This document shows positions 2,835 to 23,074 of a DNA stretch of 38,767 nucleotides, piece by piece. The notes under the pieces are model-generated. The model was not told the origin of the DNA. It saw only the letters and a program-made list of their open reading frames with translations, and did no database searches. The DNA comes from Salisapilia sapeloensis CBS 127946 (lineage: Eukaryota; Protista; Oomycota), in the NCBI GenBank assembly GCA_023334545.1, contig JAADVB010000181.1:1-38767 (forward strand), in the 5' to 3' direction. The position numbers were made by a program, and so were the translations under genes. The first letter of the stretch is position 1, and every line of letters begins with the position of its first letter.

Positions 2835-4388
2835 TCACGCGCATAATTCTTCCTGGCAACGAGGACAAGTGCACGTAAATTGGTACTCACGTAGACACTC
2901 GTGACGCTCATGCACGTTTTGATCGACATCAATGTACGAGATACATAGCTCATCTCCTTCCTACACATTGCTTTAGTAGGAGATACAGGATACTAGTACA
3001 CGATAGACATACCTTGATCGGTTGCACGGCAAAGACGTGGGCGGATCCGTCCTTGGTGTAAAGGACGGTGCAGTTCGGGTCACAGCTATGGTTCATCGTG
3101 CAGATACCGGAGAAGAGGGCGGTGCCTTCGACACCGACAAAGTCTTCGTCGTCGGCAGATGCGTCCTCTTCATCCGGTTCAACTTCTTCCGCCACGTGGT
3201 GGTGGGAAGCAGAAAAGTCTCGAAGGGCGTTTTTCACTCGCACCAGGACCGGCGGCATGCCTGCACTCTTCTTCTCAGTGTTTGCTGCTTCAGCTAGTGC
3301 CTCTGCAAGCGCGTGGAACGGATGGTCGATCTCCATACTAATGTTGTTCATCTCGAACATGCCGACGATTTGACTGAAGAAGTCGACGTTGAGCACTGGT
3401 GCACATGCCGATAAGACGTCAGCGGTCGTGAGTCCATTCAGCTCTTCATTCTTTTCCAATGTCGATAAACTTTCTTCCAGTCCAGCGCGTAGATGGCCAA
3501 ACGTTTGAGCTAGCAAGTCCTTGAATTTCGCCTGATACTCTTCTAATGTTTCACTATCATCCGCTTCCAAGTCGGCTTCTGATGTAATGACCTCCCACCA
3601 AGGCTGTTTACAGAACATGTCGACAGGTTCCTTTGCTCTTGACAAGTCTTGTGTCTGGATGAAGGAACTGAGGATACGACTGAGGACTTTCGCTGCTAGT
3701 TGAAAGATCTCATTCGTGATCATCGAATGATTGATAAAGTGACCCATGGCACTTGAGTTATCTTCCGATCGAGTGCAGAGGAGAGCATGATGCTCCTTGA
3801 AGGCTTTGTCCAGACACGTTTGGGAGCAGTATTGCGCATGACACTTGTGTGGGCAATCGACGCGTCCCTTTCCGAGCGTAAAGACACTAAAGTAGCTTTC
3901 TTCCGGTGTCTTCCCACCCTCCTTTTGAAGGTAGTCGATCGCGTTGTAAAAGTCCTGCTCGGTCGCGACGGACTCTGAGGTACTAGTCGACTGGACACGC
4001 TGCCAACAGTCACTCGTGTCGATCAAAGGCACAAAGCACTCGTCACAGCAGTCGACAAACTCCTATCATCAATAGAACCCGTTTAATGTAAATTCGAAAG
4101 ACTAGACACATGGCCAACGTCGAAGAAGAGCCATGGGATGGCATGCTACAATGCGACTTGTAGCGACAATTAGTTAATAAATTCGAAACGTACACGATTG
4201 TCTTCGTGCTGCATGGCAACGAATGGAGCTTCTGTCCAGATCGGAGATCCGGCAGCAAAGGTCGATCGAGCAAAGACGCCTTTGCCTTTGTCCTTGCCAG
4301 CATCCTCACAAGCGATTGGTGGTCCATGGAGCTTTCCATCAATCAGTTTTTTAAAGTACGCCTGAACGTTTGCGTCTGAAGCTTGCAT
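2835..4388 (-). CDS. SET-domain lysine methyltransferase with split MYND finger (SMYD5-like); complement(join(2835..2960,3013..4062,4194..4388)), 456 aa
   Basis: Motifs KGKGVFA (SET-N), CCDEC...CPHKCHAQYCSQTC...HHALLC (split MYND), MNHSCDPNC, ELCISYI and post-SET FTCTCPRC. Introns 4193-4063 and 3012-2961 (GT-AG, phase 0) join the exons in frame. First ATG at 4388; TGA at 2837-2835. Confidence 0.9.
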
Positions 4389-4798: not shown

Positions 4799-5616
4799 AT
4801 GAAGATTACAACTCTGAGTACATATCTGCTCATTCGATCTTCAAAGGCTGCCATTGGCGACATTGATCCAGCAGCTTGCTCCAAGTGCTCTGGACTCGAG
4901 TATTGCACGGCACTTAATGGAAAATGGCTATACGATCCGGTTATTGGGTACACAAGGTAAGATCTCTTGACAAACAATGCATTGCAGTCGAATCCATTGG
5001 GTGTGGGACCTACTTTGCGACACCACCGAGCGATGATGTGGAAAGATATGTACTTACTCTCTTTCTTTTTGTTTGGAACAGGCAGACAACGTCGCAGCTT
5101 GAAGGCCAGGGTGCGTGCCAAGATATAGATACAAAGACTTACATCTTGAGCCAGTTCGGGCCCGAGCATCACTTCGTAGACACTCCAGCGTGTCACGAGC
5201 TCGTCTGGAATTTCCATTGTCTCGCATGGACAGATGCAATCTTCCAGCGAGTATCTATGCGTACTTCGACACCTTGCGCTAGTAGCGGTGGGTCGAAGCC
5301 GTTACCACCCTGTCGCTCACTATGCGTCGAAGTGGCAGACAAATGTGTCTACCCGCATCTGTATAGAACCTACTTGGAAGAAGTTTGTGGTAACATACCT
5401 TGTGTCACTGAAGAGGAAGAGCTCAAGTCATCCAATACATCTGATCCAGTCTACCAGAAGCCGTGTGTGCCAGGTGAATGGGAGAAAGAGGTGAACTCGT
5501 CATTTTCGAGGTGTTCCATACGTGCCTACGAGATTCCGAAGTCGATTGCTGCAAATTTGAAGTGCACAAAAGTGTTGATTGCGATTGTATTTACAATCGT
5601 ATTTCTGTTAGTGTAG
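4799..5616 (+). CDS. Small Cys-rich surface protein with Frizzled-CRD-like domain and C-terminal hydrophobic (GPI/TM) tail; join(4799..4956,5082..5616), 230 aa; start uncertain
   Basis: Strong donor AG|GTAAGA at 4957 and pyrimidine-rich acceptor ending 5081 (125 nt) join two ORF-track frames. Pattern DTPACHELVWNFHC...PLPPCRSLCVEVADKC resembles the CRD PCRxLCxxVxxxC motif. C-terminus is VLIAIVFTIVFLLV. Confidence 0.65.
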
Positions 5617-5959: not shown

Positions 5960-8900
5960 CTAGGACTCGCCCAATGCAAGTTTCTCGATTTGGTTAAATG
6001 TCGCCTTGTCGATTCGCTTGAGACCAGCTCCGTCGACTTGCTGGTTCGATGCTTTTGGTTCTTCCCTAGCTTTTGGCTTTTCGGTAACTTCTGGTATTTC
6101 TCCAGGCTCTGGTTCCGCTTCACTCTCGTCGTCTGGCATCCTCCCGTTTGCATAATAAGCTGCCTTATCATATACAAATTTCCATTTCAAATCATCATCG
6201 CTGTCTTTAGATGGTGACGCGTCTACAACCGAATTGTAGTACACTTTGTAGTCGTACTGTAGCATTGCATCCTCCCAAATACCGGTATCAGATTGATCAT
6301 CCTGCACTGAGCTGGAGCTTTCTTCACTACCTTCTTCAGCAGATAAAGATCCATCCGACTCGCTGCTGTCATCTTGCGACAAATCTTCATCTGACGCACT
6401 CTCAGACTCTTCATGCGAAGAAGATTGGCTTTCTGAGTCAATCTTTGACCCTTTATCGGGATCGTAGTAAGCTTTTTCATCATACTGTAACTTCCAATCT
6501 TCAGACTCAAACGTGTCCACTTCGTCTCTCTCATCTGATGCATCGATGCCAGATCCTGATTGACCGGCTGAGGTAGATGATTCGGATTTTACTTGTGGAT
6601 TGTAATACGTCTTGTTATCATACTGAAGTTGCCAGTCATCAGGCATGTCAATCACTTGGTCAGTACTGTTAGATGACGATGGCCCTTGGGAGGAAGCAGA
6701 ATTAGAAATAGAAGACGATTCACTCGAGTCGCTTTGTGATGCAGAATGGTCGTCTGAAGAATCTGATTGGGATTTTACTTCTGGATTGTAGTACGTCTTG
6801 TTATCGTACTGAAGCTGCCATCCTCTAGGAATATCAATCTCTTGCTCATCACTCTCAGTAGCCGATGCTTTTTCATCAGATTTTGCTTCAGAGCTTGAAG
6901 ATGATTCACTCGAATCCCTTTCTGATGCAGATTGACTATCAGAGCTAGACGCCTCTGTACTTGCATCCAAACTTCGACTCTCAGAGCTAGAATCATCTTC
7001 AAATGAAGACTTGGATTCTATCTCCGGATTGTAGTATGTCTTATTATCGTATTGGAGTTGCCACCCTTTTGGGATCTCAATCTCCACTTCATCACTGTCA
7101 GATGATTCAGACGTCTCTGATAAAGCTGAGGACGGTGCTTCAGTCGATTGAGAATTCGAATCTGAAGCGGAGTCACTCGAATCACTTCCCGATGCCGATT
7201 GACCGTCAGAGTTAGTTGATCCCATACTTCCACTCATGTCCAGACTGTCCAAACTAGATTTACTTTCTGATGCTGACTCGGAGTCTAATTCGGGGTTATA
7301 ATATGCCTCTTCTTCATATTGAAGTCTCCAGTCGCCAGTGACACTAGGCTCTTCCTCTAGACTTTCAGAAGATGATTTGTTTCTATCATCATCATCCGAC
7401 GATGAATCATCATCTGATGAAGAATCGGAATCCGAAGATGAATCGTCATCCGACGAAGAATCGGAATCCGACGAAGAATCGGACGCGGATGAAGAATCAT
7501 CGCTGGACGAGTCCGACCCAGAGCTAGAGTCAGATTCACTGGATGAACCACTGTCCGACATAGATTGACTGTCGGATTCAATCGATCCCATACTGTCGCT
7601 TGCAGAATCTAGTCCCGAGTCTGATGCAGAGCTCAGCTCGGAGCTACCTGCTTCACCACCAAATGAGCCTGAAGACGAACCACTCTCGGATGACATGGAT
7701 TGCGAGCCAGATTTGGAACCCGAATCACCATCCGATGAGTCTGAGAGAGACATAGACATCGAATCAGATCCACTGTCGGAGGCACCCGACAGCGAAGTGG
7801 ACATTGATACAGATCCAGCTTCAGGATCTTGTGAACCTGACGCAGAGGTACTTTCGGACGACGTCGAGTCCGAATCAGACTTCGAATCTGAATCACTGTC
7901 TGAGGAGTCAGACTTGGAATCGGAACTGCTATCCAAGGAGTCTGACATAGAGGTAGACATGGAGCCAGATCCGGCATTCGACTCGAAGCTACCAGCTTCA
8001 GGCTCGTTTGAGTCTGAGGCTGAACCACTATCAGAATCTGTGGAACTCGAGTCAGACTTTGAATCCGAGTCGCTATCGGAAGAGTCGGGTGTAGAGGAAG
8101 ACTTGGAGTCAGATCCACTGTCAGAATCCATAGAGAGTGAGTCAGACCCACTGTCCTCCATCGATCCAGCTTCATCTTCACCACTACCACTGGATCCAGA
8201 GCTACTATCCGAGTCATCGTCTGAGCTGGAGCTGCTGTCCGACTCACTTTCAGATCGGTCGCTGCTTCCAGAATTATCATCTGACGTGGAAGAACCGGAG
8301 TTGGAGCCACTCGAATTTGAAGTGGATTGATCCGAATTGTCATCTGATGTCGTCGACTGTGATCGACTCTTGTCCTTTGAAGTATCTGACGACTTGGAAT
8401 CCGGTTTCGACCTGCTTGTATCTTTATCGTTATTGTCATCATTATTGCCTTCCTTCTGCTTCGCTCTCTCTTTCAACTCCTCCAGAACCTCCTCCATCTT
8501 CTTTTCATTCTCCAGTTGTTCCTCTAGTTCCTGCATTTGTTCCTGTTGCATTTCCATTTCTGCTTTCGGAGTACCCGTGTTTCCGCCGCCACCGCCGCCA
8601 CCGCCGCCACCACCAAATAAGCTTGAGAAGAACCCACCGATTGCATCAGAAATGCCCGAAGCAAGTTTTGAAAACGCATCAATTGCATCCAAGGCGAGTC
8701 CAACTCCTTGAATGAATAACTTGGCTCTACGTATAGGACCGACAAGCTCAAGGAGTGGACCGAGCGTCGATATAACGCCGCTAAGAGAACCGGCCATTGA
8801 GCTGAGTGAAGTTAATGAGCTTAGGCCGGTGCTAATACCGGATATACCTGAAGTAAGACCACCAAGCTTGGTCCCAAGACCACCCATGTTACCAAGGCCA

Positions 8901-10880
8901 CTCAGCACTCCTCCCAAGCCACCTGCGGCTCCACCCGCCCCTCCGGCAAATGCACCTGCCAAACCCCCGGCAGCGCCTCCTAAACCACCACCAGCACCTG
9001 TTAAACCACCGGCGGCGCCAATCGCGCCACCAGCAGCACCAATCGCAGCAGCAGCTCCACCACCACCGGTAATCGCCGCTGTCACGCCACCGATGCCTGC
9101 ACCAATTCCACCAGCGAGGGCTCCGATTGCGCCAAAGCCGGTGCCTACTCCGACAATACCGGCACCGATCAATGCAGCTGCATCTCCGGCGTCACCATCA
9201 TTGTCACCACCTTCACCGACCATGTCAACGGTTGGGAGTACGGCTTCACCCGCTTCTACCCCGCCTTCTCCATCTGCGTCAATTCCAGGTAGATCGATGG
9301 ACGTTTCCGGTGCGTCCGTAGTCGGGCTTGGTGGATCATCATCATCACCGCCGTCTACATCCGGAACTTCGACAGGGGTTTTATCTTCATCTGATTCACT
9401 CGGAAGACCCCCGATGATGCCTGCGATACCACCTCCCGATTCATCAATACCGCTACTTGCGCTACCCTGATTCGATTCCTTCGAGACAGGTTCTACAAAG
9501 CCAGGAATAATAGCTCCCGACCCACCACTATCACTGCCTCCAGTATTTCCACTCGAGTCGTCCGGAAAAATTTCTACACCAGCAGGCAGACCAGCTTCTG
9601 GCTCATCACTACCGTCGCTTCCGCGATTGCCACTTTGACTGTTCACCGGTCGTTGAGGCTGCTTTGAATCCTCCGATGGTGGTGCAGTTGTGGAACTCTC
9701 ATTAGCGTTTTGATTCGAACCACTAGAATCTACGCTGTCTACACTTGGCGATATGAAGCCAGGGACTGTACCACCGGACGGTTGTTCATTTGCTCTTGAA
9801 CTATCTCCAGCGTCCGCAGTCGAACCTGTATCTGGTGACATGGAGCCAGGCACAGTACCGCCCGATGGCTCTTGACCTTCTCCTGGAGAATCTGGAGCTG
9901 ATGGTATGAAGCCAGGAACAGTACCGCCCGATGGTTCGTCTTGATCTCCTGAAGCCCCTCCAGTATCTGGAGTCGCAGTCGGTACGTTCTGGAACACACC
10001 AGTCTGCATAATGTCAGTCGTCGACTGACCTGGTATGTTCTTGAACACACCAGATTCCTTCGTTTCACTCTCAGGCTGAGTCGATTCGCCAGAGCCATCC
10101 GCTTGATTTCCGAGTAGACGTGGAGGCGGAGTCGGTAAGTTTGTGAACTGAGATAAGTGTTCAGTTTGACTCGTAGGCTGCTCTGGTAAGTTTTTAAATT
10201 CCGATACGTGTTTAGTTTGACCTGCAGAAAGACCCGATGTCGTCGGCTGTGAAACTTGTGAGCTTTTGTCGGTAATATCTTGTTCACCCAAGAGATGTCT
10301 GTGCGAGACTTTTAATGTTTTCGCAGCTACTGTAGTTGCGAATCGCGTTTGAATCTCAAAATCACTGCTACGACTACCCTTATTCATCTTACTTGACGAT
10401 AATATTCGCTTTTTCTTCATCAATTGGTTATCGCTATCCACAACTTTCCGGAGAGTTTGCGTCCGGGTATTTCGTCTCAGGTCCGACAGTACCGCATCCG
10501 GATGGTAACTTTGCTGCGAATCGGACGACACGAATGCATGAACACTATAATAGTTTCGTTCCCTGGTAGTATCGCTTACACCTTCACTAGCCGATATTGC
10601 TTTAGCACTTGCATGAGGCGCTATTGCATGCTTTAAGACTCGTACATCTAGGATGAATTAAATAGAAATGATTACCGTTCCAGACGCCCTGCTGGTCCTT
10701 CGTATCGTGTACTGATACCTCATTATATCTAGCACTATCTCCTGACCATTGATCTGTTGCTGCTGCGTCCATATTGCGATTTGTACTCTTATGCAGATCT
10801 GAAAAACTCTTCGCATCAATTACGATCTGTACCGATTGTAAGAAGCTGAGTACGAGCAACTTTTGCAATATTTTATTCAT
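5960..10880 (-). CDS. Very large (~1590-1630 aa) predicted secreted low-complexity protein: signal peptide, short repeats, Gly/Ala-rich hydrophobic core, coiled coil, Ser/Asp-rich stalk, seven Trp/Tyr motif repeats
   Basis: The 1523-codon ORF stays open upstream of the GTG at 10531 to about 10650. An upstream exon from ATG 10880 encodes MNKILQKLLVLSFLQSVQIVIDA (signal-peptide-like). Three frame-restoring GT-AG introns are possible (10675-10621, 10786-10648, 10675-10648); I cannot choose among them. Confidence 0.75.
6140..7335 (-). repeat. Seven dispersed coding repeats, consensus (P)x(G/D)W(Q/R/K)LQYD(N/E)K(T/A)YYNP, separated by Ser/Asp/Glu spacers
   Basis: Copies: GDWRLQYEEEAYYNP, PKGWQLQYDNKTYYNP, PRGWQLQYDNKTYYNP, PDDWQLQYDNKTYYNP, EDWKLQYDEKAYYDP, EDAMLQYDYKVYYNS, LKWKFVYDKAAYYAN. 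Confidence 0.9.
7380..7530 (-). repeat. Tandem SSSD(D/S)D coding minisatellite inside the Ser/Asp stalk
   Basis: Encodes SSSDSSSGSDSSSDDSSSASDSSSDSDSSSDDDSSSDSDSSSDDDSSSDDDD; plus strand shows repeated GA(A/T)GAATC(G/A)...TCCGACGA units. Confidence 0.8.
8583..8615. repeat. (CCGCCGCCA)x3 CCACCA microsatellite encoding 11 glycines on the minus strand
   Basis: Read directly from the sequence; translates to LF-G11-NTG. Confidence 0.9.
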
Positions 10881-14563: not shown

Positions 14564-16843
14564 TCATGGTACAGGAGTCCCTGCCGTAGCAATTACACTA
14601 CCTCCGCTCGAAGCACTTTCATCTGACCCACCCGAGCTCGACATTCCGTCACTTCCCGATGACTCTTTGTTCGCCTTGCCGCCATCCTCTGAAAAGTCAG
14701 TCATGTCCGTTGGATTGCTCCCGCTAGTACTTCCTTCATCCGACATGCTAGATCCGGACATGCTCCAGCCATCTGACGATGTCTCCGCTGACTCGGTGCC
14801 TTCATCGTCAAGATCATCCGTCTCACCGCTTTTAGAGCCGTCACTTTTAAAGCTGTTGTCGACAGAACTAAAGGTTGACGTGCTTGAGTCATCAGAAGGA
14901 GCAAACATCAACTCGTCACCTTCGTCAATAAGGTCGTCAGTGCCATCACTTTTAGAGCCATCAATTGTAGAATTACCGTCGATAGAGCCCGCAGTCGATA
15001 CACTCGAGCCATTGGATGAGGTTGTCGTCGACTCGGTGCTGTTGTCATTAAAAATGTCAACAGGATTGGCCGTCTCGGAGTTATCATTTTCACCGCCCTC
15101 ATCCATAGAACCAGAGGTCGACACATTCGAGCTGCCAGGTGGAGCGCCGACCATCCCCTCGTTTTCGTCCAATGAGCCGGAGGTCGAAATGCTTGAGCTG
15201 TCGGACGGAGCATCAGTAGCCACGATGCTTTCTTCGAAAAGGTCATCATTATTGTCCGTTTCGCTGCCATCATTTTCAGAGGCGTTGTCCACAGAACGGG
15301 AGGTAGACATACTCGAGTTTTCCGATAGAGCATTAGTCACCTCTTCGTCTTCGTCTACAGAACCGGAGGTCGACGTGTTTGAGCCGTCAGATGACACGTC
15401 CGTTCCCTCTCCGCCTTCATTCACAGAGCCACTACCATCACTCGTCTCGGAGCTATCGCTTCGACTAGCTTCGCCTGACATATTAGAGGTCGACATGCTC
15501 GAGCCATCGGATGAGGTTTCCATTGAATCGGTGCCTTCATCATCAGCAAGTTTTTCACTGCTATCCATCGACGCGGATGTCTCACTATCACCGGATTTGC
15601 TATTTTCAGCTAGACTACCGTCAGTGTTGCTGTCAGCTGCTTTAGAAGTGATGTCTTCCTGGTCGGTACTTGCGTCAGAATTGCTACTGGCATCAGTTGA
15701 AGGAACAGATCTGAAAGAGGAGTGAAAAGTATTGTCGCTCTCATCCGACCCGTCGCTGTCGTCACTCTCGGTGGAGCCTGCTTCGCCGTCCAGTTCGTTG
15801 TTCGAATCTAAACTGGAGGAACCATTTGCAGTGTTAGTCCCTTCTTTCATATCATCATCGTCATCTGATCCTTCGGTGTCCACATTAGCCGAGAGGTCAT
15901 CCGAATCTTGTCTAGAGTCGGCATGAACTACTCCAGCTTCCTCCTCTTCTGTCTCTGAAGCGGACGAATCAGACGGCTTGTGTTGACTATGAGGACTCGA
16001 AGCGATACCTAATAGTTCAAAAGTAGCCTGTGATGGAGATGGAGGTTGGTCACTATCGACGGCCAAGTCATCCGAAGTGTCACTGTCACTCTCTCCTACA
16101 TCCAGGTTATCATTATTCTCGCTTCCAGTACGCTTGACAGCCGAGTCATCAGAAGTATCACTATCACTCTCCCCAACATCTAGGTTTCCACCAGTTTCGC
16201 TTCTACCATTTTTCTCACTCGAACTCGAGCCAGACTCGCTCTTCGCATCTCCTTTTTCAATCGTTATGTCCGCGCAGTTCACATACATTTGATCTCCTTC
16301 GAATTGGAGTTGGAGAGCACATGCACCTTTATCGACGCATACCGTAACGTTTGACGGAATTTGGACTTGGACCTTCTTCGCATCAGACGATGGATTATAC
16401 TTGTCATTCGAATACAGCGTCTGGTAGGCGTTAAAGAAGGGCTTTGTAGCTCCACTATCAATGGGCTGGACGATTGAAACGGACAACTTTCCAGCTTCCT
16501 TCCCTTCCAATTCGAACGTCACATCCAGTTCATCTCCGGGCGACAACACTTCCACCGGCGTTTTCCCAGCTTCATAGACAGTCCCGCCACATCCATTGTA
16601 CAGCGCATTGTTAAATTCACCATCATTTCCATCCTTTGTCTTCGTAGCAATGGTAACAATCTCTTCCAGACTCTTTTTCTCGAAATCTTCGTCCGAGACA
16701 TCAAACTTGGTCAAATTCAATCGATCTCGTAGTCCATCCGTAAGTGGACGAGGCTTTGGATTCTTTAGAAACGTTTGTCCCAAGACACTCGAGGCTAGGA
16801 GACTCGAGATGAAAAGGTACGTCGAGGTAGAAGGTATCTTCAT
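14564..16843 (-). CDS. Secreted protein, 759 aa: LPMO/chitin-binding-type-4-like N-terminal domain (His-less) followed by a long Ser/Asp-rich stalk
   Basis: Signal peptide MKIPSTSTYLFISSLLASSVLG from ATG 16843; the ORF-track start at 16882 lies in the promoter. The domain NGCGGTVYEAG...PGDELDVTF...CALQL...QMYVNCADITI ends in the QxYxxCADI pattern seen at LPMO C-termini. The remaining ~560 aa are low complexity. Confidence 0.7.
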   Translation of the reverse strand: MKIPSTSTYLFISSLLASSVLGQTFLKNPKPRPLTDGLRDRLNLTKFDVSDEDFEKKSLEEIVTIATKTKDGNDGEFNNALYNGCGGTVYEAGKTPVEVLSPGDELDVTFELEGKEAGKLSVSIVQPIDSGATKPFFNAYQTLYSNDKYNPSSDAKKVQVQIPSNVTVCVDKGACALQLQFEGDQMYVNCADITIEKGDAKSESGSSSSEKNGRSETGGNLDVGESDSDTSDDSAVKRTGSENNDNLDVGESDSDTSDDLAVDSDQPPSPSQATFELLGIASSPHSQHKPSDSSASETEEEEAGVVHADSRQDSDDLSANVDTEGSDDDDDMKEGTNTANGSSSLDSNNELDGEAGSTESDDSDGSDESDNTFHSSFRSVPSTDASSNSDASTDQEDITSKAADSNTDGSLAENSKSGDSETSASMDSSEKLADDEGTDSMETSSDGSSMSTSNMSGEASRSDSSETSDGSGSVNEGGEGTDVSSDGSNTSTSGSVDEDEEVTNALSENSSMSTSRSVDNASENDGSETDNNDDLFEESIVATDAPSDSSSISTSGSLDENEGMVGAPPGSSNVSTSGSMDEGGENDNSETANPVDIFNDNSTESTTTSSNGSSVSTAGSIDGNSTIDGSKSDGTDDLIDEGDELMFAPSDDSSTSTFSSVDNSFKSDGSKSGETDDLDDEGTESAETSSDGWSMSGSSMSDEGSTSGSNPTDMTDFSEDGGKANKESSGSDGMSSSGGSDESASSGGSVIATAGTPVP
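16068..16186 (-). repeat. Two-copy internal duplication (period 78 nt) encoding NLDVGESDSDTSDD
   Basis: Near-identical segments at 16068-16109 and 16146-16186 that differ mostly at third codon positions. Confidence 0.85.
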
Positions 16844-16864
16844 GAAAAGTGTCGGCTGGCGATG

Positions 16865-16880
16865 AAAAGTAAAAATGAGC
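16865..16880 (-). promoter_or_regulatory. Initiator + FPR core promoter of the LPMO-like gene
   Basis: Minus strand GCTCATTTTTACTTTT matches the GCTCATTYBNNNWTTY consensus and lies about 22-37 nt upstream of ATG 16843. Confidence 0.75.
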
Positions 16881-17031
16881 ATGACAAGCTTTCCTTCCCT
16901 CCCTTCCCTTCCATGACGCTTGTATTAAGTATTATCCAGCGTACATTCCATTTATCAATTCGAATCACATCCACATACATATCTCACGAAACACATCCAA
17001 GGGCATAAGTATATTCCTACCACAAATCTAT

Positions 17032-19968
17032 TTACAATCCCTTCGTCGTCACCACTTCCTCCAGGACCTTGGATGCTAATTCATCGTGAGGTGGTAACTG
17101 CCCTTCGCTTAACAACTTCTGACGTATCTGTTCCGCTGCGGACAAGTGATGAACAGATCGTTGGGAAAAGATTTTCAACACAGCGTTCGACTCACTCGCT
17201 TCCGTCAAGACAGTCACGATCTTCTGTCGCCAGAGCTCGTGGATGCCACGCATCGCACTGTGTCGTAGCTCCTGTCGCATGTCGCTAGAGCCTATCATTG
17301 GGATTGCACACGACACGTTCAAGACGTTTGCAGCACAGTTCATCGCCGGATCTCGCTCGCCCTCAATGGTTACCAGGACTTCGACCGCAAAGGATTCTCT
17401 TCCAGCGACATGAATGTGCATCCCGAATTCAAGACGAGTATCTGCCTCGTCATCCGGATCTTGCGTACTTAAGAAACAGTACTGGACATCTTCAACCTGT
17501 ACGTTTTCCGAATTTTTCACCGACATACAAAACGTTTGCTTCCGGATCTTGCCAATCGTTTCCGGCGATGAGTACGATCGATCGCGACTGTCATCAAGTT
17601 CACTCAAGTCCATCTTGTCGTCCTTGACGACTTGCTTCTGGTATGGCATCCAAGACGTAATGTCAACGTGTCCGTTAGTCGTACACTTGCGACCCACGGC
17701 ATACTGTGCCATGGCACTTTCATCGGACAATAAAGTCTGGAAGACAACCCAAGGACTCAACTTGCCATTAAGTTTCTCCGTGACGACTGGAACGAATTCT
17801 TTCTTGCTGCACTGGAAGAAAGGAACGGATGTAGCGATTGGACCGCCTCGATCGGATCCGCTACTACGTCGCATGTCTCCGTCGCCATTGTACACATTCC
17901 ATGAGATACCTCCGATGGGAAGTTTGGCAAAGTGGAGCGAAGCAGAGGAAGCTAGTTCTTGACGAGTGTACGATTTGGCTAAAGCAGTGAGCATGGACTT
18001 AGCTACTTCCATCGGTAGAGGGTGCACTTCGAGCATCTTCTGACCTGTCAGTGACTTGCGCTCGGAGGAAGAATCACCACGTCCACGAGCAAACGTACCG
18101 AGCATTGTGTTGCATGCATTCTTGACGCCTTCGAATGCACTCTTGTAGAGTTCGTCATCCACACGTACGGGGGAGACGACACCGGCACGACATTGGACGT
18201 CAACCTCACTCATGCCAGGCTCGCCATGTCCAGTCTGGAAGTCCAATACACACTCGACTGATACGTTGTTTGCCATGGGGATACCTAAAAGCACTACGCA
18301 TGAACGTACTGTCATGCTTCGAAAGTTCTTTTCATCCACTTCGCATGAAGTATAGACGTCCATCGCCACAGGATTCACATTCTTCACGATGGCTGAAGTG
18401 CTCTTGCACATGTCTGTCGGTGGTCGATAACAAATGCGACGGACATAGCCAAAGCGTTTATGATAATGCCACTCACGTCCGTTCTTACTCTCATTTTGAG
18501 AGGTCGAACCAGAATGATTGCTCGTCGAGTCTGCGACAGGAGATTCAGATAGTTGCGTCGCGTCATCCATGTCGGTTGAAGAGGTGGACACAGACGGAAT
18601 GAGAATGCCTTTCTTCTTCTTACTCACCGCAACAGCGTTCCGTCGAGCTTCTGTATCGACCATAAGCTCCACAATGTCTCGAACAGACCATTGGGTTAAA
18701 CTTGTGGCAAAGATCTGCTTCATTTTCTTCGCTGGTAGTTGAGAAAACTTCTTGGTAGACTTTGGATCTGGTCGCCAAGGAATGTACACACACGAGTGTT
18801 TGCTCTGCGTCAAGATGGGCGGCTGGAAGGCTGTATTTCCAATACGAGGGAACACCACGGGTGCAGATGTACGCGTAGGTTTGGCCGACGGCAAGCCGAC
18901 GTCTTCCGAGGTCATCTGCTGTTCTTCTCGAGCTTCAAATGCAGATAGGTCGGAAGCATATCGTAGTTTTAGTGCGTTTGAAAAGCTTCTGGATAAATAA
19001 ACAGGCGACGATCCATCGCTACTAAAGCTGCTTTCCAATAGATTGTTCATGCTGGACGACAAGATGTTCGAACTGCTACCACTAAACCCATTATTCGATC
19101 CACCCCATGAAGTGGAAGAGTTGGACGATTGTGAGAGAAAGTCAGTTGTCCTGGAAAGCCATAGTCCCTGTCCAAACCTGGCAGAACAGAGCAATAAATA
19201 GATAGGAGAAGACACCTGTGGTTCCTCTTCTTCTTCCTCTGTCTTTCCTTTCTTTTGAGACCCGACGTCTGGTGTCAAGACACGGAATGCTTCCCATCCT
19301 TGTAGCTTTTTGGCACTCACAACAGGCTTACCGACAAATGTCTGTCCGATAAGTCGTTGAGAAATGGTAGAACGAAATCCCCAGTGGTGAGTCTTTCCCT
19401 TTTCAATATGGAACAAACAAGAGGCATCCGGAGATGCAGTCATGACGAGCTTCCGCTGCCTCGTAACGCATAAAAAGAGTCCGCTGTTTTCGTCTTGTAG
19501 ATACACCGACTCGGACTCACTCGCGCTGATTTGATGATCACATAGAGACTCCGTCACCTGATAATAGGCAGATTTGTCCGCGGTGGCTGCTGACACGACA
19601 TGCTCCGAAGCAGACGCATCCGACCAGGCCTTGGCGCGTGCTCGAGCTTCTTCAAACAGTTCATCCGACAGACCGCGCGAGAGCTCTTCTCGCGCAGAAG
19701 CTGTTGCTTTCTTCGACTTTTCAACAATATGCGCATTCGTACTTTTGGATATCTGGCGCGGGTCGCTCCAGTGGAAGCATGCAGCGGCAACTTCCCGCAC
19801 AAACGAGCAGTATGAGTCCGTGGAAAGACATGCGCACGCGAAGAGTGTCGGTACGAGCGCCATGAGGAGCATGTGGGACCAAGAGCTGGCGCTCGCGGAC
19901 GCCAGGATCAACGTCAACACGGCACTCGTCGCCAAAGATGCGGCAACTGGTAGAAGCTCTACCTCCAT
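17032..19968 (-). CDS. 978-aa protein: N-terminal membrane anchor, fascin-like beta-trefoil segment, two VASt/StART-like lipid-transfer domains
   Basis: Single ORF with a hydrophobic N-terminus. Segment VYLQDENSGLFLCV...WGFRSTISQRLIG...KKLQGWEAFRV resembles fascin-like repeats. Two helix-grip-like regions: YVRRICYRP...VLLGIPMANNVSVEC and SPWVVFQTLLSD...ITSWMP...IRKQTF...ESFAVEVLVTI. Confidence 0.6.
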   Translation of the reverse strand: MEVELLPVAASLATSAVLTLILASASASSWSHMLLMALVPTLFACACLSTDSYCSFVREVAAACFHWSDPRQISKSTNAHIVEKSKKATASAREELSRGLSDELFEEARARAKAWSDASASEHVVSAATADKSAYYQVTESLCDHQISASESESVYLQDENSGLFLCVTRQRKLVMTASPDASCLFHIEKGKTHHWGFRSTISQRLIGQTFVGKPVVSAKKLQGWEAFRVLTPDVGSQKKGKTEEEEEEPQVSSPIYLLLCSARFGQGLWLSRTTDFLSQSSNSSTSWGGSNNGFSGSSSNILSSSMNNLLESSFSSDGSSPVYLSRSFSNALKLRYASDLSAFEAREEQQMTSEDVGLPSAKPTRTSAPVVFPRIGNTAFQPPILTQSKHSCVYIPWRPDPKSTKKFSQLPAKKMKQIFATSLTQWSVRDIVELMVDTEARRNAVAVSKKKKGILIPSVSTSSTDMDDATQLSESPVADSTSNHSGSTSQNESKNGREWHYHKRFGYVRRICYRPPTDMCKSTSAIVKNVNPVAMDVYTSCEVDEKNFRSMTVRSCVVLLGIPMANNVSVECVLDFQTGHGEPGMSEVDVQCRAGVVSPVRVDDELYKSAFEGVKNACNTMLGTFARGRGDSSSERKSLTGQKMLEVHPLPMEVAKSMLTALAKSYTRQELASSASLHFAKLPIGGISWNVYNGDGDMRRSSGSDRGGPIATSVPFFQCSKKEFVPVVTEKLNGKLSPWVVFQTLLSDESAMAQYAVGRKCTTNGHVDITSWMPYQKQVVKDDKMDLSELDDSRDRSYSSPETIGKIRKQTFCMSVKNSENVQVEDVQYCFLSTQDPDDEADTRLEFGMHIHVAGRESFAVEVLVTIEGERDPAMNCAANVLNVSCAIPMIGSSDMRQELRHSAMRGIHELWRQKIVTVLTEASESNAVLKIFSQRSVHHLSAAEQIRQKLLSEGQLPPHDELASKVLEEVVTTKGL

Positions 19969-20539: not shown

Positions 20540-23074
20540 ATGGACAAACCCAAAGTGCCAAAGTTCTCGTACTCTACCTCCATGGCAGACACGCGTGGAT
20601 GTGACCAAGCACCGTCGGTCGCTCAAGCAAAAGAATGGTTTCGAACGGTCATCCTTCCTCGACGTAAATGGGATGAGAACACAAAGAGCTATCGTCTTGT
20701 GGAAATGGGTGAAGACACGACTGGCTCTGAGCTCTTTCCAGTCTTTGGTACCAATCTGCGAGACCTTAGTCAATTCGGCATTGGCATCGGACTATACTTT
20801 CGCATGTTACTGCATCTAGCTGTGCTCATGTGCATCCTGTCTGCAGTTTCGATACCTGCCATCGTCTACTTTCTAAGTGCAGACTATTCTGGACCAATGG
20901 AAGAAAGACGTGTTCAAGTGGATGGACAGTTGGAAAGCGTCGACTGGCGCGTATGGGGTACAGCCGTGTGCACTCGCCATGAGCCAAATGGGACCACAAA
21001 CGATTGTCCTCTGGACGTCACACAATTCGGAGTAGACATAGTCTCGATTATCGTTCTCTGCCTTTATTGCATCATCGTGGAAGCACTGACGGAGCGAGCG
21101 CAGCGTCTCATTGATGCTCAGAATCAAACGGCAGCAGACTACTCAGTCGTCGTAAAAGACCCGAACGCGGATGCGTGGGAAGTAGATGAATGGTATGACT
21201 ACTTTCGTCAATTCGGAACGGTCAAAATGATCACTATAGCCGTGGATAACCACGCTCTGCTCTCGTCCTTGGCTCATAAACGATATTACGAAAGCATGGT
21301 CCGCATGGGCTCGACCAACCAGAGCTTGACGGAGCAAACGCTCCAAGAAGCCATGAATCAGGACAAAGCCATCCGTCGTACGCTTCGTCGAAAAGTATCC
21401 TTCTTCCGTCGCATGCTACAAGCCCTTGGTTTCTCTCGCGACCTACCATACTGGCAAGCAGCAGTCGCCAAGGAGCGACAGCGAGTGGCAGCACACTTGC
21501 GTCAAGGTCATTTCCCGGTCTCGGCTGTCTTTGCCATGTTCGAGACGGAGAAAGACAAGCAGCGCTGTCTTCTAAAGACACAGACAGGTCTTTGCGCTAC
21601 GTTCTACGATGCGAGCTCTCGTGTCGACTCTGCACATCGCTTTCGTGGGTCCAATGTTCTTCACATTGAAGAGCCAGTAGAACCTACGTCTGTCCTCTGG
21701 TCATCCGTTGGTGTCGGATGGCTCAAACGTTTCTCCCAACAAGTCTGTACGTTCATCATCTTAGTAGGCATGATAATCGCTGTCTACTTTGGTGCCACCT
21801 ACCTCAAGCATATACTCTACCCATCTGACCTGTCGGAAGGCGAAGCAAACAGTCGAGTGAAACAGTTTGTCCTTGCCTACGCTTTGTCTTTCTCTGACTT
21901 TGTCGGTTGCTACATCCTGTCGTACGTCGATCAATTGGAAGACCATCAGACGAAAGAACGGGAGCAACTGTCTCGACTGAATAAACTCCTGGTCTTTCGT
22001 GGATTCAACGGAGCAGTCGTACTATACTTGCTCATGGACTTTACAGACACCTTGTCGGAACGGAACTTAATGCAGATCCAAGCGTTGCTCATAGCTAACT
22101 TGACGACGAACCCTGTTCTCCAACTAATCGGTCCATATAGCCGGGTGATGCGTCTACTCTTTGCCAGAAGTGCTAAGACACAACGCAAGTTGGATCAGTA
22201 CTACTCGGGAGACTACTGGCAGCTATCCGAGCGCTACACGGACATCACCAAGTCTGTCGGTACGGCACTCTTCTTCAAGCCTTTGCTACCAACGGGACTA
22301 GCCATTACGATGTTATCTTTAATCGTCAATTACTGGGTTGACAAGTACTGTTTACTTCGGAAGTGGAAGACACCTCCCAAGTACGACGGTCTCCTCGCAC
22401 ATGCTTCGAGGTACCATTTACTAATCATCGCCCTCGCCTCGTTAATCATGGTCGGACACTGGTACAATGGATGGCCGTTTGATACTGAAACACAAGACAA
22501 ACTGAAAGACTTGAGCTTTTATAGCGACTATATGGATGAAGATGTAGTCCAAGTACTAGCGCGCATCGTCCCTCTACCTCGTGAGTTTGATAATATCGTG
22601 CTACGGATCGGTATGATTATCCTGTGTTCCGGCATCGTGTTGATTTGGGTGATTGGTGTTATCCTTTTTCTGTCAAGTGTCATCTTTCGAACGTATCGAC
22701 GCTATGTCAGCGGTCGATTGCGTGGTAATACGAAGAGTGAGACACAGCTCAGTACGGTGCCAGCTTCTAGAGTCAAGAACTTGGATGGATATGTGCAGAC
22801 GTATGAAACACCCTTGTCCGACTTTGCTTTCATCTCGGTGCCTTTGCATGACTTTGATAACAAGTACATCTCGTGGACGGGGGAACATGAAGACTACTGC
22901 CTTGCGGATGATGTACTGAAGGATATCAACTTTGCTAACATGGTTGCAGAGAAAGATGTTACGAGGATCTTTGGTATCTGCAAACAGTATGACACGTCGG
23001 AGGAAACAAGTGAAGGATCTTGGGTTTCCGTGAAGAAGCCCCAGCAGATCAAAGGTAGGCAGGATGTCGTTTAA
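20540..23074 (+). CDS. OSCA/TMEM63(CSC1)-like ion channel of the TMEM16/OSCA/TMC superfamily, 844 aa
   Basis: Single ORF with about 9-10 TM segments. Motifs: FGIGIGLYFRML, TAADYSVVVKDP, AVFAMFETE, EPVEPTSVLWSSV, ERYTDI...LFFKPLLP...VNYWVDKYCLLRKWKTPP. Confidence 0.8.
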   Translation: MDKPKVPKFSYSTSMADTRGCDQAPSVAQAKEWFRTVILPRRKWDENTKSYRLVEMGEDTTGSELFPVFGTNLRDLSQFGIGIGLYFRMLLHLAVLMCILSAVSIPAIVYFLSADYSGPMEERRVQVDGQLESVDWRVWGTAVCTRHEPNGTTNDCPLDVTQFGVDIVSIIVLCLYCIIVEALTERAQRLIDAQNQTAADYSVVVKDPNADAWEVDEWYDYFRQFGTVKMITIAVDNHALLSSLAHKRYYESMVRMGSTNQSLTEQTLQEAMNQDKAIRRTLRRKVSFFRRMLQALGFSRDLPYWQAAVAKERQRVAAHLRQGHFPVSAVFAMFETEKDKQRCLLKTQTGLCATFYDASSRVDSAHRFRGSNVLHIEEPVEPTSVLWSSVGVGWLKRFSQQVCTFIILVGMIIAVYFGATYLKHILYPSDLSEGEANSRVKQFVLAYALSFSDFVGCYILSYVDQLEDHQTKEREQLSRLNKLLVFRGFNGAVVLYLLMDFTDTLSERNLMQIQALLIANLTTNPVLQLIGPYSRVMRLLFARSAKTQRKLDQYYSGDYWQLSERYTDITKSVGTALFFKPLLPTGLAITMLSLIVNYWVDKYCLLRKWKTPPKYDGLLAHASRYHLLIIALASLIMVGHWYNGWPFDTETQDKLKDLSFYSDYMDEDVVQVLARIVPLPREFDNIVLRIGMIILCSGIVLIWVIGVILFLSSVIFRTYRRYVSGRLRGNTKSETQLSTVPASRVKNLDGYVQTYETPLSDFAFISVPLHDFDNKYISWTGEHEDYCLADDVLKDINFANMVAEKDVTRIFGICKQYDTSEETSEGSWVSVKKPQQIKGRQDVV

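What the first reader, a model, noticed from the sequence alone, without database searches (positions are those of the whole stretch)
16260..16777. LPMO-fold-like domain with no histidine: candidate pseudo-enzyme
Seen: the predicted mature protein starts with Gln (VLG|QTFLKNPKPR), the ~175-aa domain contains no His, it has four Cys, and it ends QMYVNCADITI. Established: LPMOs need His1 plus a second His for the copper brace. From memory, related oomycete secreted domains begin with H and carry an HPG motif where this one reads KEAG. Inference: a copper-free LPMO-like module on a ~560-aa acidic stalk, acting as polysaccharide binder, wall scaffold or decoy.
Basis: partly seen in the sequence, partly recalled or inferred. 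Interest (0 to 1): 0.72.

Follow-up and report, generated by a model that had tools for sequence, protein, structure and literature searches.

The report
Copper-site-less AA16 LPMO relic on acidic stalk
An oomycete gene encodes a secreted protein whose head is a clear descendant of the AA16 copper enzymes (LPMOs) but has lost both copper-holding histidines and gained a very long acidic tail, so it is most likely a non-enzymatic offshoot of an enzyme family in which those histidines were thought strictly conserved.

Summary
ORF 14564-16882(-) encodes a signal peptide, a 173-aa head (16259-16777) with no His and four Cys, and a 564-aa acidic Ser/Asp-rich tail.

- **Copper site:** in 127 oomycete relatives, His1 is present in 114/114 and the second His in 125/126. 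Here they are Gln and Glu. The axial Tyr, the Q-x-Y motif and all four Cys are kept.
- **Position:** the gene sits in the syntenic slot where two Phytophthora species carry three intact tandem AA16 genes, between the same flanking genes. The histidines were therefore lost, not ancestrally absent.
- **Divergence:** the head is 23-31% identical to relatives, which share 37-94% with each other.
- **Tail:** it is about seven times longer and far more acidic than usual, and lacks the family's usual Cys-polybasic end.

Most likely this is a copper-free, non-catalytic AA16 derivative acting as an extracellular binding or matrix protein. That function is inferred only. It is a new variant of a known kind, of moderate interest. 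Other first-reader notes on this genome report further His-less LPMO-like genes; these are unverified.

The parts
14564..16882 (-). Whole ORF, 772 codons plus stop. The probable start is Met14 at 16843, giving a 759-aa precursor.
   Evidence: ORF list and translation. Met14 aligns with the start Met of relatives. It is the only AA16-like hit in a six-frame HMM scan of the window.
16778..16843 (-). Signal peptide (22 aa, MKIPS...SSVLG). Predicted cleavage is Gly|Gln.
   Evidence: This is the most hydrophobic 19-aa window of the protein. It has Val at -3 and Gly at -1. It aligns column for column with the family's ...V-D-A|H-G-Q site. SignalP was not available.
16259..16777 (-). AA16-fold head domain, 173 aa, with no His and four conserved Cys.
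16775..16777 (-). Codon CAA = Gln1 of the mature protein, at the position of the copper ligand His1.
   Evidence: This column is His in 114 of 114 relatives that have it. Model residue 23 aligns to residue 1 of 7ZE9. The codon was read.
16496..16498 (-). Codon GAA = Glu94 (mature numbering), at the position of the second copper-ligand His. The local motif is G-K-E-A-G instead of A-P-H-P-G.
   Evidence: This column is His in 125 of 126 relatives. All four residues of the A-P-H-P motif are changed. The codon was read. His to Glu needs two base changes, so this is not a single-base sequencing error.
16283..16285 (-). Tyr165 of a retained Q-M-Y motif. This corresponds to the family's Q-T/N-Y motif, which holds the axial Tyr and the second-sphere Gln.
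   Evidence: This column is Tyr in 117 of 120 relatives and is kept here, as is Gln163. The stacking Trp is changed to Phe159. Motif roles are taken from PMC6420742 and PMC10088020.
14567..16258 (-). 564-aa polyanionic Ser/Asp/Gly/Glu/Thr-rich tail. No transmembrane segment, no GPI-like end, no Cys-polybasic end.
   Evidence: Composition, pI 4.05, net charge per residue -0.21, 9 N-x-S/T sequons, loose repeats of an S-x-S-T-S-G-S-x-D type unit. No Pfam family.
16058..16203 (-). 78-bp tandem duplication (1.9 copies, 79% matches) just after the head. It encodes two copies of a 26-aa acidic unit.
   Evidence: Tandem Repeats Finder.
17032..19968 (-). Upstream neighbour on the same strand (978 aa, no Pfam hit). 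This is a synteny anchor. Its Phytophthora homologue lies directly upstream of the canonical AA16 tandem array.
   Evidence: tblastn E 3e-62 to L001 and 3e-57 to L002, about 27% identity. The fused gene model P0010 joins this gene's homologue to a His1 AA16. Pfam found nothing.
2950..4032 (-). SET-domain gene. This is a downstream synteny anchor, about 61% identical to the SET gene beyond the Phytophthora AA16 array.
   Evidence: tblastn E 1e-122 to 1e-130. Pfam SET.
4924..5616 (+). 230-aa ORF. This is a second downstream synteny anchor, 51-55% identical to the opposite-strand 193-aa gene between Peptidase_C69 and SET in Phytophthora.
   Evidence: tblastn E 2e-61 and 9e-58, with relative orientation conserved (gene tables).

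Best explanation
The gene encodes a secreted, non-catalytic descendant of an AA16 lytic polysaccharide monooxygenase. After signal-peptide cleavage, the 173-aa head keeps the AA16 beta-sandwich, with both disulfide pairs, core Gly/Pro residues, the axial Tyr and the Q-x-Y motif. The two histidines that, with the N-terminal amine, form the copper 'histidine brace' are replaced by Gln1 and Glu94. The surrounding A-P-H-P motif, Gly2, the Trp that stacks on the Tyr, and much of the helical L2 region are also changed. Without the brace it cannot hold copper in the LPMO manner, so it should have neither LPMO activity nor the H2O2-producing oxidase activity reported for AA16. An N-terminal Gln is also liable to cyclise to pyroglutamate, which would remove the amine ligand as well (general chemistry, an inference here). 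The head carries a 564-aa strongly acidic, Ser/Thr-rich, probably glycosylated disordered tail with no membrane or GPI anchor. The gene occupies the chromosomal slot where Phytophthora keeps three intact tandem canonical AA16 genes, so it arose from a normal AA16 by loss of the copper site and expansion of the tail. Shown here: homology, fold, residue replacements, synteny, the intact ORF and the tail properties. Inferred: that the protein is made, is copper-free, and works as an extracellular binding or matrix protein. In that reading the remodelled former active face is a ligand-binding head on a polyanionic, hydrated stalk in the wall or adhesive layer, or a decoy in host interaction.
For: - **Homology:** 14 hits with no length limit, best E 6e-13, all oomycete 'chitin-binding type-4' proteins. 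The relatives pass the Pfam LPMO_10 gathering score. The family profile's best PDB hit is 7ZE9, MtAA16A, at E 3.5e-18 (entry identity from PMC10088020). An HMM built without the query gives 102.4 bits, against 5.4 or less for shuffles.
- **Site loss:** His1 in 114/114 relatives, His2 in 125/126, Tyr in 117/120, and Cys in at least 118 of 119-126 filled columns. The query has Q, E, Y and all four C.
- **Pattern of retention:** of 49 columns at least 90% conserved in the family, 22 are kept, including all four Cys and other core residues. The changed ones include H1, G2, the A-P-H-P motif, W159, S161 and L2-region residues. Retention falls to 31% in moderately conserved columns and 15% in variable ones, which is the gradient expected under continued selection on the fold.
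- **Synteny:** conserved flanking genes and orientation relative to two Phytophthora loci that carry canonical AA16 arrays. An AU test does not reject grouping the query with that array's clade (p 0.32).
- **Contrast with true decay:** a fourth AA16 copy at both Phytophthora loci is split across reading frames, and one has also lost a Cys and the Tyr. Both still show the His motifs. The query shows the opposite: an intact 772-codon ORF with all four Cys but no His.
- **Tail:** 564 aa at net charge -0.21, against a family median of 80 aa (maximum 156) at -0.02. 91 of 107 family tails end in Cys plus a polybasic run, which is absent here.
Against: - There is no expression or protein evidence.
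- No orthologue was found in any other genome, so purifying selection could not be measured.
- The terminal branch is extreme (8.7 substitutions per site against a median of 0.3), which would also fit relaxed constraint.
- The AF2 model leans on an alignment of canonical AA16s, so it cannot show the local geometry of the altered site.
- Gln, Glu and Tyr could still bind some metal.
- The closest characterised AA16 does not bind cellulose (PMC10088020), so there is no positive evidence for any ligand.
- The tail-length comparison is biased, because the word search only saw proteins up to about 341 aa. The unrestricted search found no long-tailed relative either.
Confidence: 0.75

Rival explanations
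1. The head is still a metalloprotein. The replacement residues (N-terminal Gln amine or amide, Glu94 carboxylate, the retained Tyr165 and Gln163) form a new site for a harder metal such as Fe, Mn, Zn or Ca, or a weaker Cu site. Together with the polyanionic tail, the protein would sequester or deliver cations, loosely like the copper-acquisition role of X325/Bim1 LPMO-like proteins.
For: The axial Tyr and second-sphere Gln are kept although both His are gone, and the second His became a potential ligand (Glu) rather than an inert residue. The tail is strongly acidic, with 137 Asp+Glu. The language-model search lists BIM1-like clusters among weaker neighbours at 0.83-0.87. LPMO folds are known to be re-used for metal handling (PMC7924993).
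Against: There is no Pfam BIM1-like match and no GPI anchor. An N-terminal Gln tends to cyclise, which would remove the amine. No conservation data exist because there are no orthologues. Tyr and Gln may be kept for packing alone. The site geometry could not be examined.
Confidence: 0.12
2. It is an evolutionary relic: a former AA16 gene drifting without function, whose reading frame survives by chance or because of recent inactivation.
For: The branch is extremely long and identity is lower than between any two canonical members. No orthologue exists in 15 billion proteins. The low-complexity tail also keeps a 352-aa ORF open on the opposite strand, so ORF length in the tail is weak evidence. 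Phytophthora loci do carry decaying AA16 copies.
Against: The non-repetitive head has no stop or frameshift over 195 codons. All four Cys and 22 of 49 highly conserved positions survive, with retention graded by family conservation. With that much divergence, neutral decay would be expected to have broken the frame and the disulfides, as seen in the Phytophthora pseudogene copies. The signal peptide and cleavage site are intact.
Confidence: 0.1
3. It is an artefact: a sequencing or assembly error, or a wrong gene model hides a normal His1 enzyme.
For: Gln (CAA) is one base from a His codon. The genome's proteins are not in the public collections, so the model could not be cross-checked.
Against: The second ligand needs two base changes, and the whole A-P-H-P motif plus about 27 other conserved positions differ. 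There is no His in the first 262 mature residues. The ORF is continuous, and the signal peptide aligns with the family.
Confidence: 0.03

Closest known systems
AA16 LPMO family (CAZy AA16, formerly X273): MtAA16A (PDB 7ZE9), AaAA16, and the oomycete clade of Phytophthora, Pythium and Globisporangium
   Different: Both brace histidines are gone (Gln1, Glu94). AA16 was described as having an N-terminal His in all sequences and a second strictly conserved His (PMC6420742), and 114/114 and 125/126 relatives here have them. The L2 region is remodelled, with a 3-residue deletion before the Q-x-Y motif. The tail is 564 aa and strongly acidic, against about 80 aa and near-neutral. There is no Cys-polybasic C-terminus. 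Identity is 23-31%, against 37-94% within the clade.
AA9 member lacking the histidine brace (Frandsen et al. 2019, J Biol Chem 294:17117; cited in PMC10354095 and PMC10486138; the paper itself was not held and not read)
   Same: It is a precedent for a natural LPMO-family protein that keeps the fold but lacks the copper brace, and so is a presumed non-catalytic LPMO-like protein.
   Different: It belongs to a different family (AA9, fungal), with different replacement residues and no giant acidic tail. I found no report of an equivalent in AA16 or in oomycetes, but the literature search was limited.
X325 / Bim1 LPMO-like copper-acquisition proteins
   Same: They have an LPMO fold re-used for a non-polysaccharide-cleaving role on the cell surface. 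They appear as weaker language-model neighbours.
   Different: X325 proteins keep a His-brace copper site and are GPI-anchored (PMC7924993, PMC8615602). This protein has neither, and it has no Pfam BIM1-like match.
AA17 oomycete pectin LPMOs (PDB 6Z5Y)
   Same: They are secreted oomycete LPMO-fold proteins. AA17 genes lie next to AA16 genes at another Phytophthora locus, shown by the fused models P0001 and P0004, whose second domain hits 6Z5Y at E 1e-14.
   Different: The AA16-type profile does not hit 6Z5Y at E of 1 or less, and 6Z5Y is not among the top 50 structural matches. The head is not AA17.
Disordered C-terminal regions (dCTRs) of LPMOs
   Same: A catalytic-type module directly followed by a long disordered extension is the common AA16 architecture. 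Cell-wall attachment has been proposed as its role (PMC8615602).
   Different: 86% of AA16 dCTRs are 50-150 residues long, and 90% are weakly charged 'disordered globules' (PMC8615602). This tail is 564 aa, with a charged fraction of 0.28 and net charge of -0.21.

Membership tests
AA16 LPMO (CAZy AA16 / X273 module) | Significant sequence similarity of the module to AA16 catalytic modules | tested here: met
   phmmer E 6e-13 to oomycete AA16 proteins. 102.4 bits to a family HMM that excludes the query. That family's profile hits MtAA16A (7ZE9) at E 3.5e-18 as the best PDB match. The query alone does not reach 7ZE9, so the link is transitive.
AA16 LPMO (CAZy AA16 / X273 module) | LPMO immunoglobulin-like beta-sandwich fold, closest to AA16 | tested here: met
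AA16 LPMO (CAZy AA16 / X273 module) | N-terminal histidine after signal-peptide cleavage (copper ligand 1) | tested here: not met
   Gln at the aligned position. It is His in 114/114 relatives and is described as present in all AA16 sequences (PMC6420742).
AA16 LPMO (CAZy AA16 / X273 module) | Second strictly conserved histidine (copper ligand 2) | tested here: not met
   Glu at the aligned position, within G-K-E-A-G instead of A-P-H-P-G. It is His in 125/126 relatives.
AA16 LPMO (CAZy AA16 / X273 module) | Q-T/N-Y motif with the axial tyrosine | tested here: met
   Q-M-Y is present, with Gln and Tyr kept and the middle residue changed. Motif definition from PMC6420742.
AA16 LPMO (CAZy AA16 / X273 module) | Binds one copper and shows oxidase or LPMO activity | not testable with these tools
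   This needs purified protein. It is predicted absent because both brace histidines are missing.
Pfam LPMO_10 (PF03067) | Score above the gathering threshold | tested here: not met
   The query has no Pfam hit even at E of 1 or less. Its relatives P0002, P0006 and P0011 pass at 33-36 bits against a threshold of 23.
AA17 LPMO | Sequence or structure similarity to PiAA17C (6Z5Y) | tested here: not met
   6Z5Y is in the library. It is not hit by the family profile at E of 1 or less and is not in the top 50 structural matches.
X325 / BIM1-like | His-brace copper site, GPI anchor and a Pfam BIM1-like domain | tested here: not met
   No His in the head, no Pfam match and no hydrophobic C-terminus.

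The most novel reading that the evidence does not exclude
The head is not merely inactivated but neo-functionalised. The Gln1/Glu94/Tyr165/Gln163 pocket on a remodelled L2 face would bind a new ligand or a hard metal ion. Together with the 564-aa polyanionic, probably glycosylated tail, it would define a new class of oomycete extracellular matrix, adhesion or cation-sequestering protein built from an LPMO scaffold. It might be one member of a wider set of brace-less LPMO-like genes in this genome, as unverified first-reader notes suggest.
Probability: 0.12. Interest if true: 0.7.

Novelty: new variant of a known kind. Interest (0 to 1): 0.45.

Why it matters
AA16 is a young and contested LPMO family. 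One member was reported to cleave cellulose (PMC6420742). Two others do not, and act as H2O2-producing helpers instead (PMC10088020). Their role in oomycete plant pathogens is unknown, although they are co-expressed with the AA17 virulence enzymes (as cited in PMC10088020). Both histidines were described as strictly conserved across the family.

A natural, intact, secreted AA16 derivative without either histidine, sitting at the same locus as canonical copies in relatives, is a ready-made 'copper-dead' control made by evolution. Comparing it with its canonical paralogues could show what the AA16 scaffold does apart from redox chemistry, such as binding, wall association or host recognition. 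It would also extend the short list of LPMO-derived pseudo-enzymes to oomycetes.

This is not a new principle. Brace-less AA9 and non-catalytic LPMO-like proteins are already known.

Tried and rejected
- **Pfam:** scans of the whole protein and of the head gave nothing at E of 1 or less.
- **PDB sequence search:** the head alone gave only a chance hit at E 1.4.
- **Word-index protein searches:** both came back empty, one with the head (length window 107-341 aa) and one with the head region of the full protein (425-1351 aa). Relatives appeared only with the exhaustive HMMER search.
- **Single-sequence AlphaFold:** useless at pLDDT 33. It worked only with the 36-sequence alignment.
- **Exact look-ups:** this protein and five neighbouring ORFs are not in the public collections. 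The organism could therefore not be named. It is an oomycete about 51-62% identical to Phytophthora in two conserved neighbours.
- **AA17 reading:** rejected. Other notes on this genome use it for similar genes.
- **Synteny elsewhere:** I looked in Pythium insidiosum, Lagenidium giganteum and Globisporangium splendens AA16 loci and found none. Those are other AA16 loci.
- **Phylogenetic placement:** unresolved because of the long branch. The AU test only fails to reject orthology with the syntenic clade.
- **Tail origin:** BLASTP between the tail and the neighbouring giant secreted protein found no significant alignment. Both contain short S-M-S-T-S motifs and have similar composition.
- **Phytophthora fourth copy:** I asked whether it might be a brace-less orthologue. 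It is not. It is a canonical-type copy split across reading frames. I described the pieces and did not join them.
Full report
**Observation.** The region lies on the minus strand inside ORF 14564-16882, which is 772 codons long. The likely start is Met14 (16843), which aligns with the start of relatives. The precursor has three parts.
- A 22-aa hydrophobic signal peptide ends in ...SSVLG.
- A 173-aa head runs from Gln (codon 16775-16777) to ...CADITI (ending at 16259). It has no His, no Trp and four Cys.
- A 564-aa tail is made mostly of Ser, Asp, Gly, Glu and Thr, with pI 4.05 and net charge per residue -0.21. It has no transmembrane or GPI-like segment.

Only the strand needed stating.

**What the head is.** Pfam, a PDB sequence search and two word-index searches found nothing. 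The exhaustive HMMER search of 1.84 billion representatives found 14 relatives, with a best E of 6e-13 and 32-35% identity. All that carry a name come from Phytophthora, Globisporangium, Plasmopara or Peronosclerospora, annotated as chitin-binding type-4 proteins. Several pass the Pfam LPMO_10 threshold.

A profile of these proteins finds the crystal structure 7ZE9 as its best PDB match at E 3.5e-18. 7ZE9 is MtAA16A, the first AA16 structure (PMC10088020). Oomycete AA16 genes are documented in Phytophthora and Pythium (PMC6420742, PMC8393829).

AA17 is excluded. Its structure 6Z5Y is in the library, but it is hit neither by the profile nor among the top structural matches.

**The copper site.** A profile search returned 132 oomycete relatives. 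I aligned 127 of them to the family HMM.
- The first ligand position is His in 114 of 114 sequences that cover it. The rest are truncated gene models.
- The second ligand position is His in 125 of 126.
- The axial position is Tyr in 117 of 120.
- The four Cys are near-universal.

The query has Gln, Glu and Tyr at those three positions and keeps all four Cys. It is the only member lacking both histidines.

The founding AA16 paper states that all sequences have the N-terminal His and a second strictly conserved His, plus a Q-T/N-Y motif (PMC6420742). Here that motif reads Q-M-Y. In MtAA16A a Trp stacks on the axial Tyr and a Gln sits in the second sphere (PMC10088020). Here the Gln is kept and the Trp is a Phe.

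Of 49 columns at least 90% conserved in canonical members, 22 are retained. These include all four Cys, several Gly and Pro, and N-G-C-x-G. The 27 changed columns include His1, Gly2, the whole A-P-H-P motif, the Trp, a neighbouring Ser, and many positions of the helical L2 region. Retention falls from 45% to 31% to 15% as family conservation falls. That is what continued selection on the fold would produce.

His to Glu needs two base changes and the whole motif differs, so a sequencing error is not a credible cause.

**Loss, not ancestral absence.** The fused gene model P0010 joins a homologue of the window's upstream 978-aa gene to a His1 AA16. Fetching that locus (L001) and the Phytophthora boehmeriae locus (L002) shows the following gene order: the 978-aa gene's homologue, then three intact AA16 genes and a fourth broken copy, then Peptidase_C69, then a 193-aa gene on the opposite strand, then a SET-domain gene.

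Read along the minus strand, the window has a matching order.
- The 978-aa gene (19968-17032) is about 27% identical to its Phytophthora homologue (E 3e-62).
- The target follows at 16882-14564.
- About 9 kb of other genes comes next.
- Then comes the 230-aa ORF at 4924-5616, in the conserved opposite orientation and 51-55% identical.
- Last is the SET gene at 4032-2950, about 61% identical.

The target is the only AA16-like sequence in the window. It therefore sits in the slot of a canonical AA16 array.

The tree cannot place it. Its terminal branch is 8.7 substitutions per site against a median of 0.3. An AU test does not reject grouping it with the syntenic Phytophthora clade (p 0.32). It is 23-31% identical to all relatives, whereas canonical members from Phytophthora to Pythium and Lagenidium share 37-94%, with a median of 55%.

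**Relic or functional?** The fourth AA16 copy at both Phytophthora loci shows what decay looks like. It is split across reading frames, and in L001 it has also lost a Cys and the Tyr. Both copies still carry the histidine motifs. I only describe these pieces and did not join them. The target shows the reverse pattern: both histidines gone, but the frame, signal peptide, disulfide Cys and core intact. This favours a retained, re-purposed protein. Without orthologues or expression data it is not proof.

**The tail.** Among 112 full-length relatives the tail is 10-156 aa (median 80) and near-neutral (median net charge -0.02). In 91 of 107 it ends in a Cys followed by a polybasic run. This agrees with the published picture that 86% of AA16 disordered tails are 50-150 residues and weakly charged (PMC8615602).

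The target's tail is 564 aa with net charge -0.21. It has nine N-glycosylation sequons and 34% Ser+Thr, a 78-bp tandem duplication just after the head, and loose repeats of an S-x-S-T-S-G-S-x-D type unit. It has no Cys-polybasic end. One caveat applies: the word search could only see proteins up to about 341 aa. The unrestricted search found no long-tailed relative either.

**Mechanism.**
- *Shown:* an AA16-fold secreted head without the histidine brace, on a long polyanionic disordered tail, derived from a canonical AA16 locus.
- *Follows from established LPMO chemistry:* without His1 and the second His there is no brace, so no LPMO-type copper centre and no copper-dependent oxidase or monooxygenase activity.
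- *Inferred:* an N-terminal Gln may cyclise to pyroglutamate. The protein probably acts outside the cell as a binding head on a hydrated, glycosylated, cation-binding stalk, as a wall or matrix component, adhesin or decoy.

MtAA16A does not bind cellulose and lacks a flat aromatic face (PMC10088020). A polysaccharide ligand should therefore not be assumed.

The rivals are a new metal site built from Gln, Glu and Tyr (0.12), a drifting relic (0.10) and an artefact (0.03).

**Comparison and novelty.** By descent and fold it belongs with AA16. It fails the two residue criteria that define an LPMO active site, so it should be called AA16-like or AA16-derived, not an AA16 LPMO. The nearest precedent is the AA9 member lacking the histidine brace (Frandsen et al. 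2019, known to me only through citations in PMC10354095 and PMC10486138). X325/Bim1 proteins re-use the fold but keep the copper site. Within the held literature I found no report of a brace-less AA16 or a brace-less oomycete LPMO. This is a new variant of a known kind and of moderate interest.

**Limits.** The organism could not be named, because its proteins are not in the collections. First-reader notes on other pieces of this genome mention further brace-less LPMO-like genes and canonical AA16 and AA17 genes. I could not see those sequences and treat the notes as leads only.

Noticed in passing
L001:8988-9711 and L002:9068-9912: At both Phytophthora loci a fourth AA16 copy follows the three intact tandem genes. 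It is split over two or three reading frames and no gene is called there. The L001 copy has also lost a conserved Cys and the axial Tyr. It looks like a decaying AA16 pseudogene, or in L002 possibly a frameshifted assembly.
   Followed up: partly
P0009 (240 aa, MetaClust record, organism unknown): This is a divergent oomycete-type AA16 with His1 but no His at the canonical second-ligand column. It reads Q-H-K-A-F-G, with a His two residues earlier, and has Phe instead of the axial Tyr. It has the second-longest branch in the tree (2.3). It may be an altered or intermediate copper site.
   Followed up: partly
P0001 and P0004 (Phytophthora gene models, 596 and 527 aa): These gene models fuse an AA16 domain to a second His1 domain with its own signal-peptide-like stretch. 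The second domain of P0001 hits the AA17 structure 6Z5Y (E 1e-14) and two 'mucin-like protein' structures, 8S71 and 8S6S. AA16 and AA17 genes are therefore direct neighbours at another Phytophthora locus.
   Followed up: partly
C-termini of oomycete AA16 relatives (P0016-P0127): 91 of 107 tails end in a Cys followed within a few residues by a run of Arg/Lys, for example ...K-C-x-x-R-R-x-R. The conserved motif has no function known to me, and it is absent from the target.
   Followed up: partly
window 5960-10531 (-): The neighbouring giant ORF (1523 aa, no Pfam hit) is also Ser/Gly/Asp/Glu-rich and contains two G-S-x-S-M-S-T-S motifs like those in the target's tail. BLASTP finds no significant alignment between the two. 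It lies in the interval where the two Phytophthora loci carry Peptidase_C69.
   Followed up: partly
window 14667-15725 (+): A 352-aa ORF on the strand opposite the tail is almost certainly a by-product of the low-complexity acidic repeat coding, not a gene.
   Followed up: no
window 20540-23074 (+): This 844-aa ORF, divergent from the 978-aa gene, matches Pfam Anoctamin at 28.3 bits, just over the threshold of 28. It fits an anoctamin/TMEM16-like channel or scramblase.
   Followed up: no
window 17032-19968 (-): The 978-aa upstream neighbour has no Pfam family at E of 0.001 or less and is only about 27% identical to its syntenic Phytophthora homologue. The SET gene in the same block is about 61% identical, so this conserved-position gene is evolving fast.
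   Followed up: no
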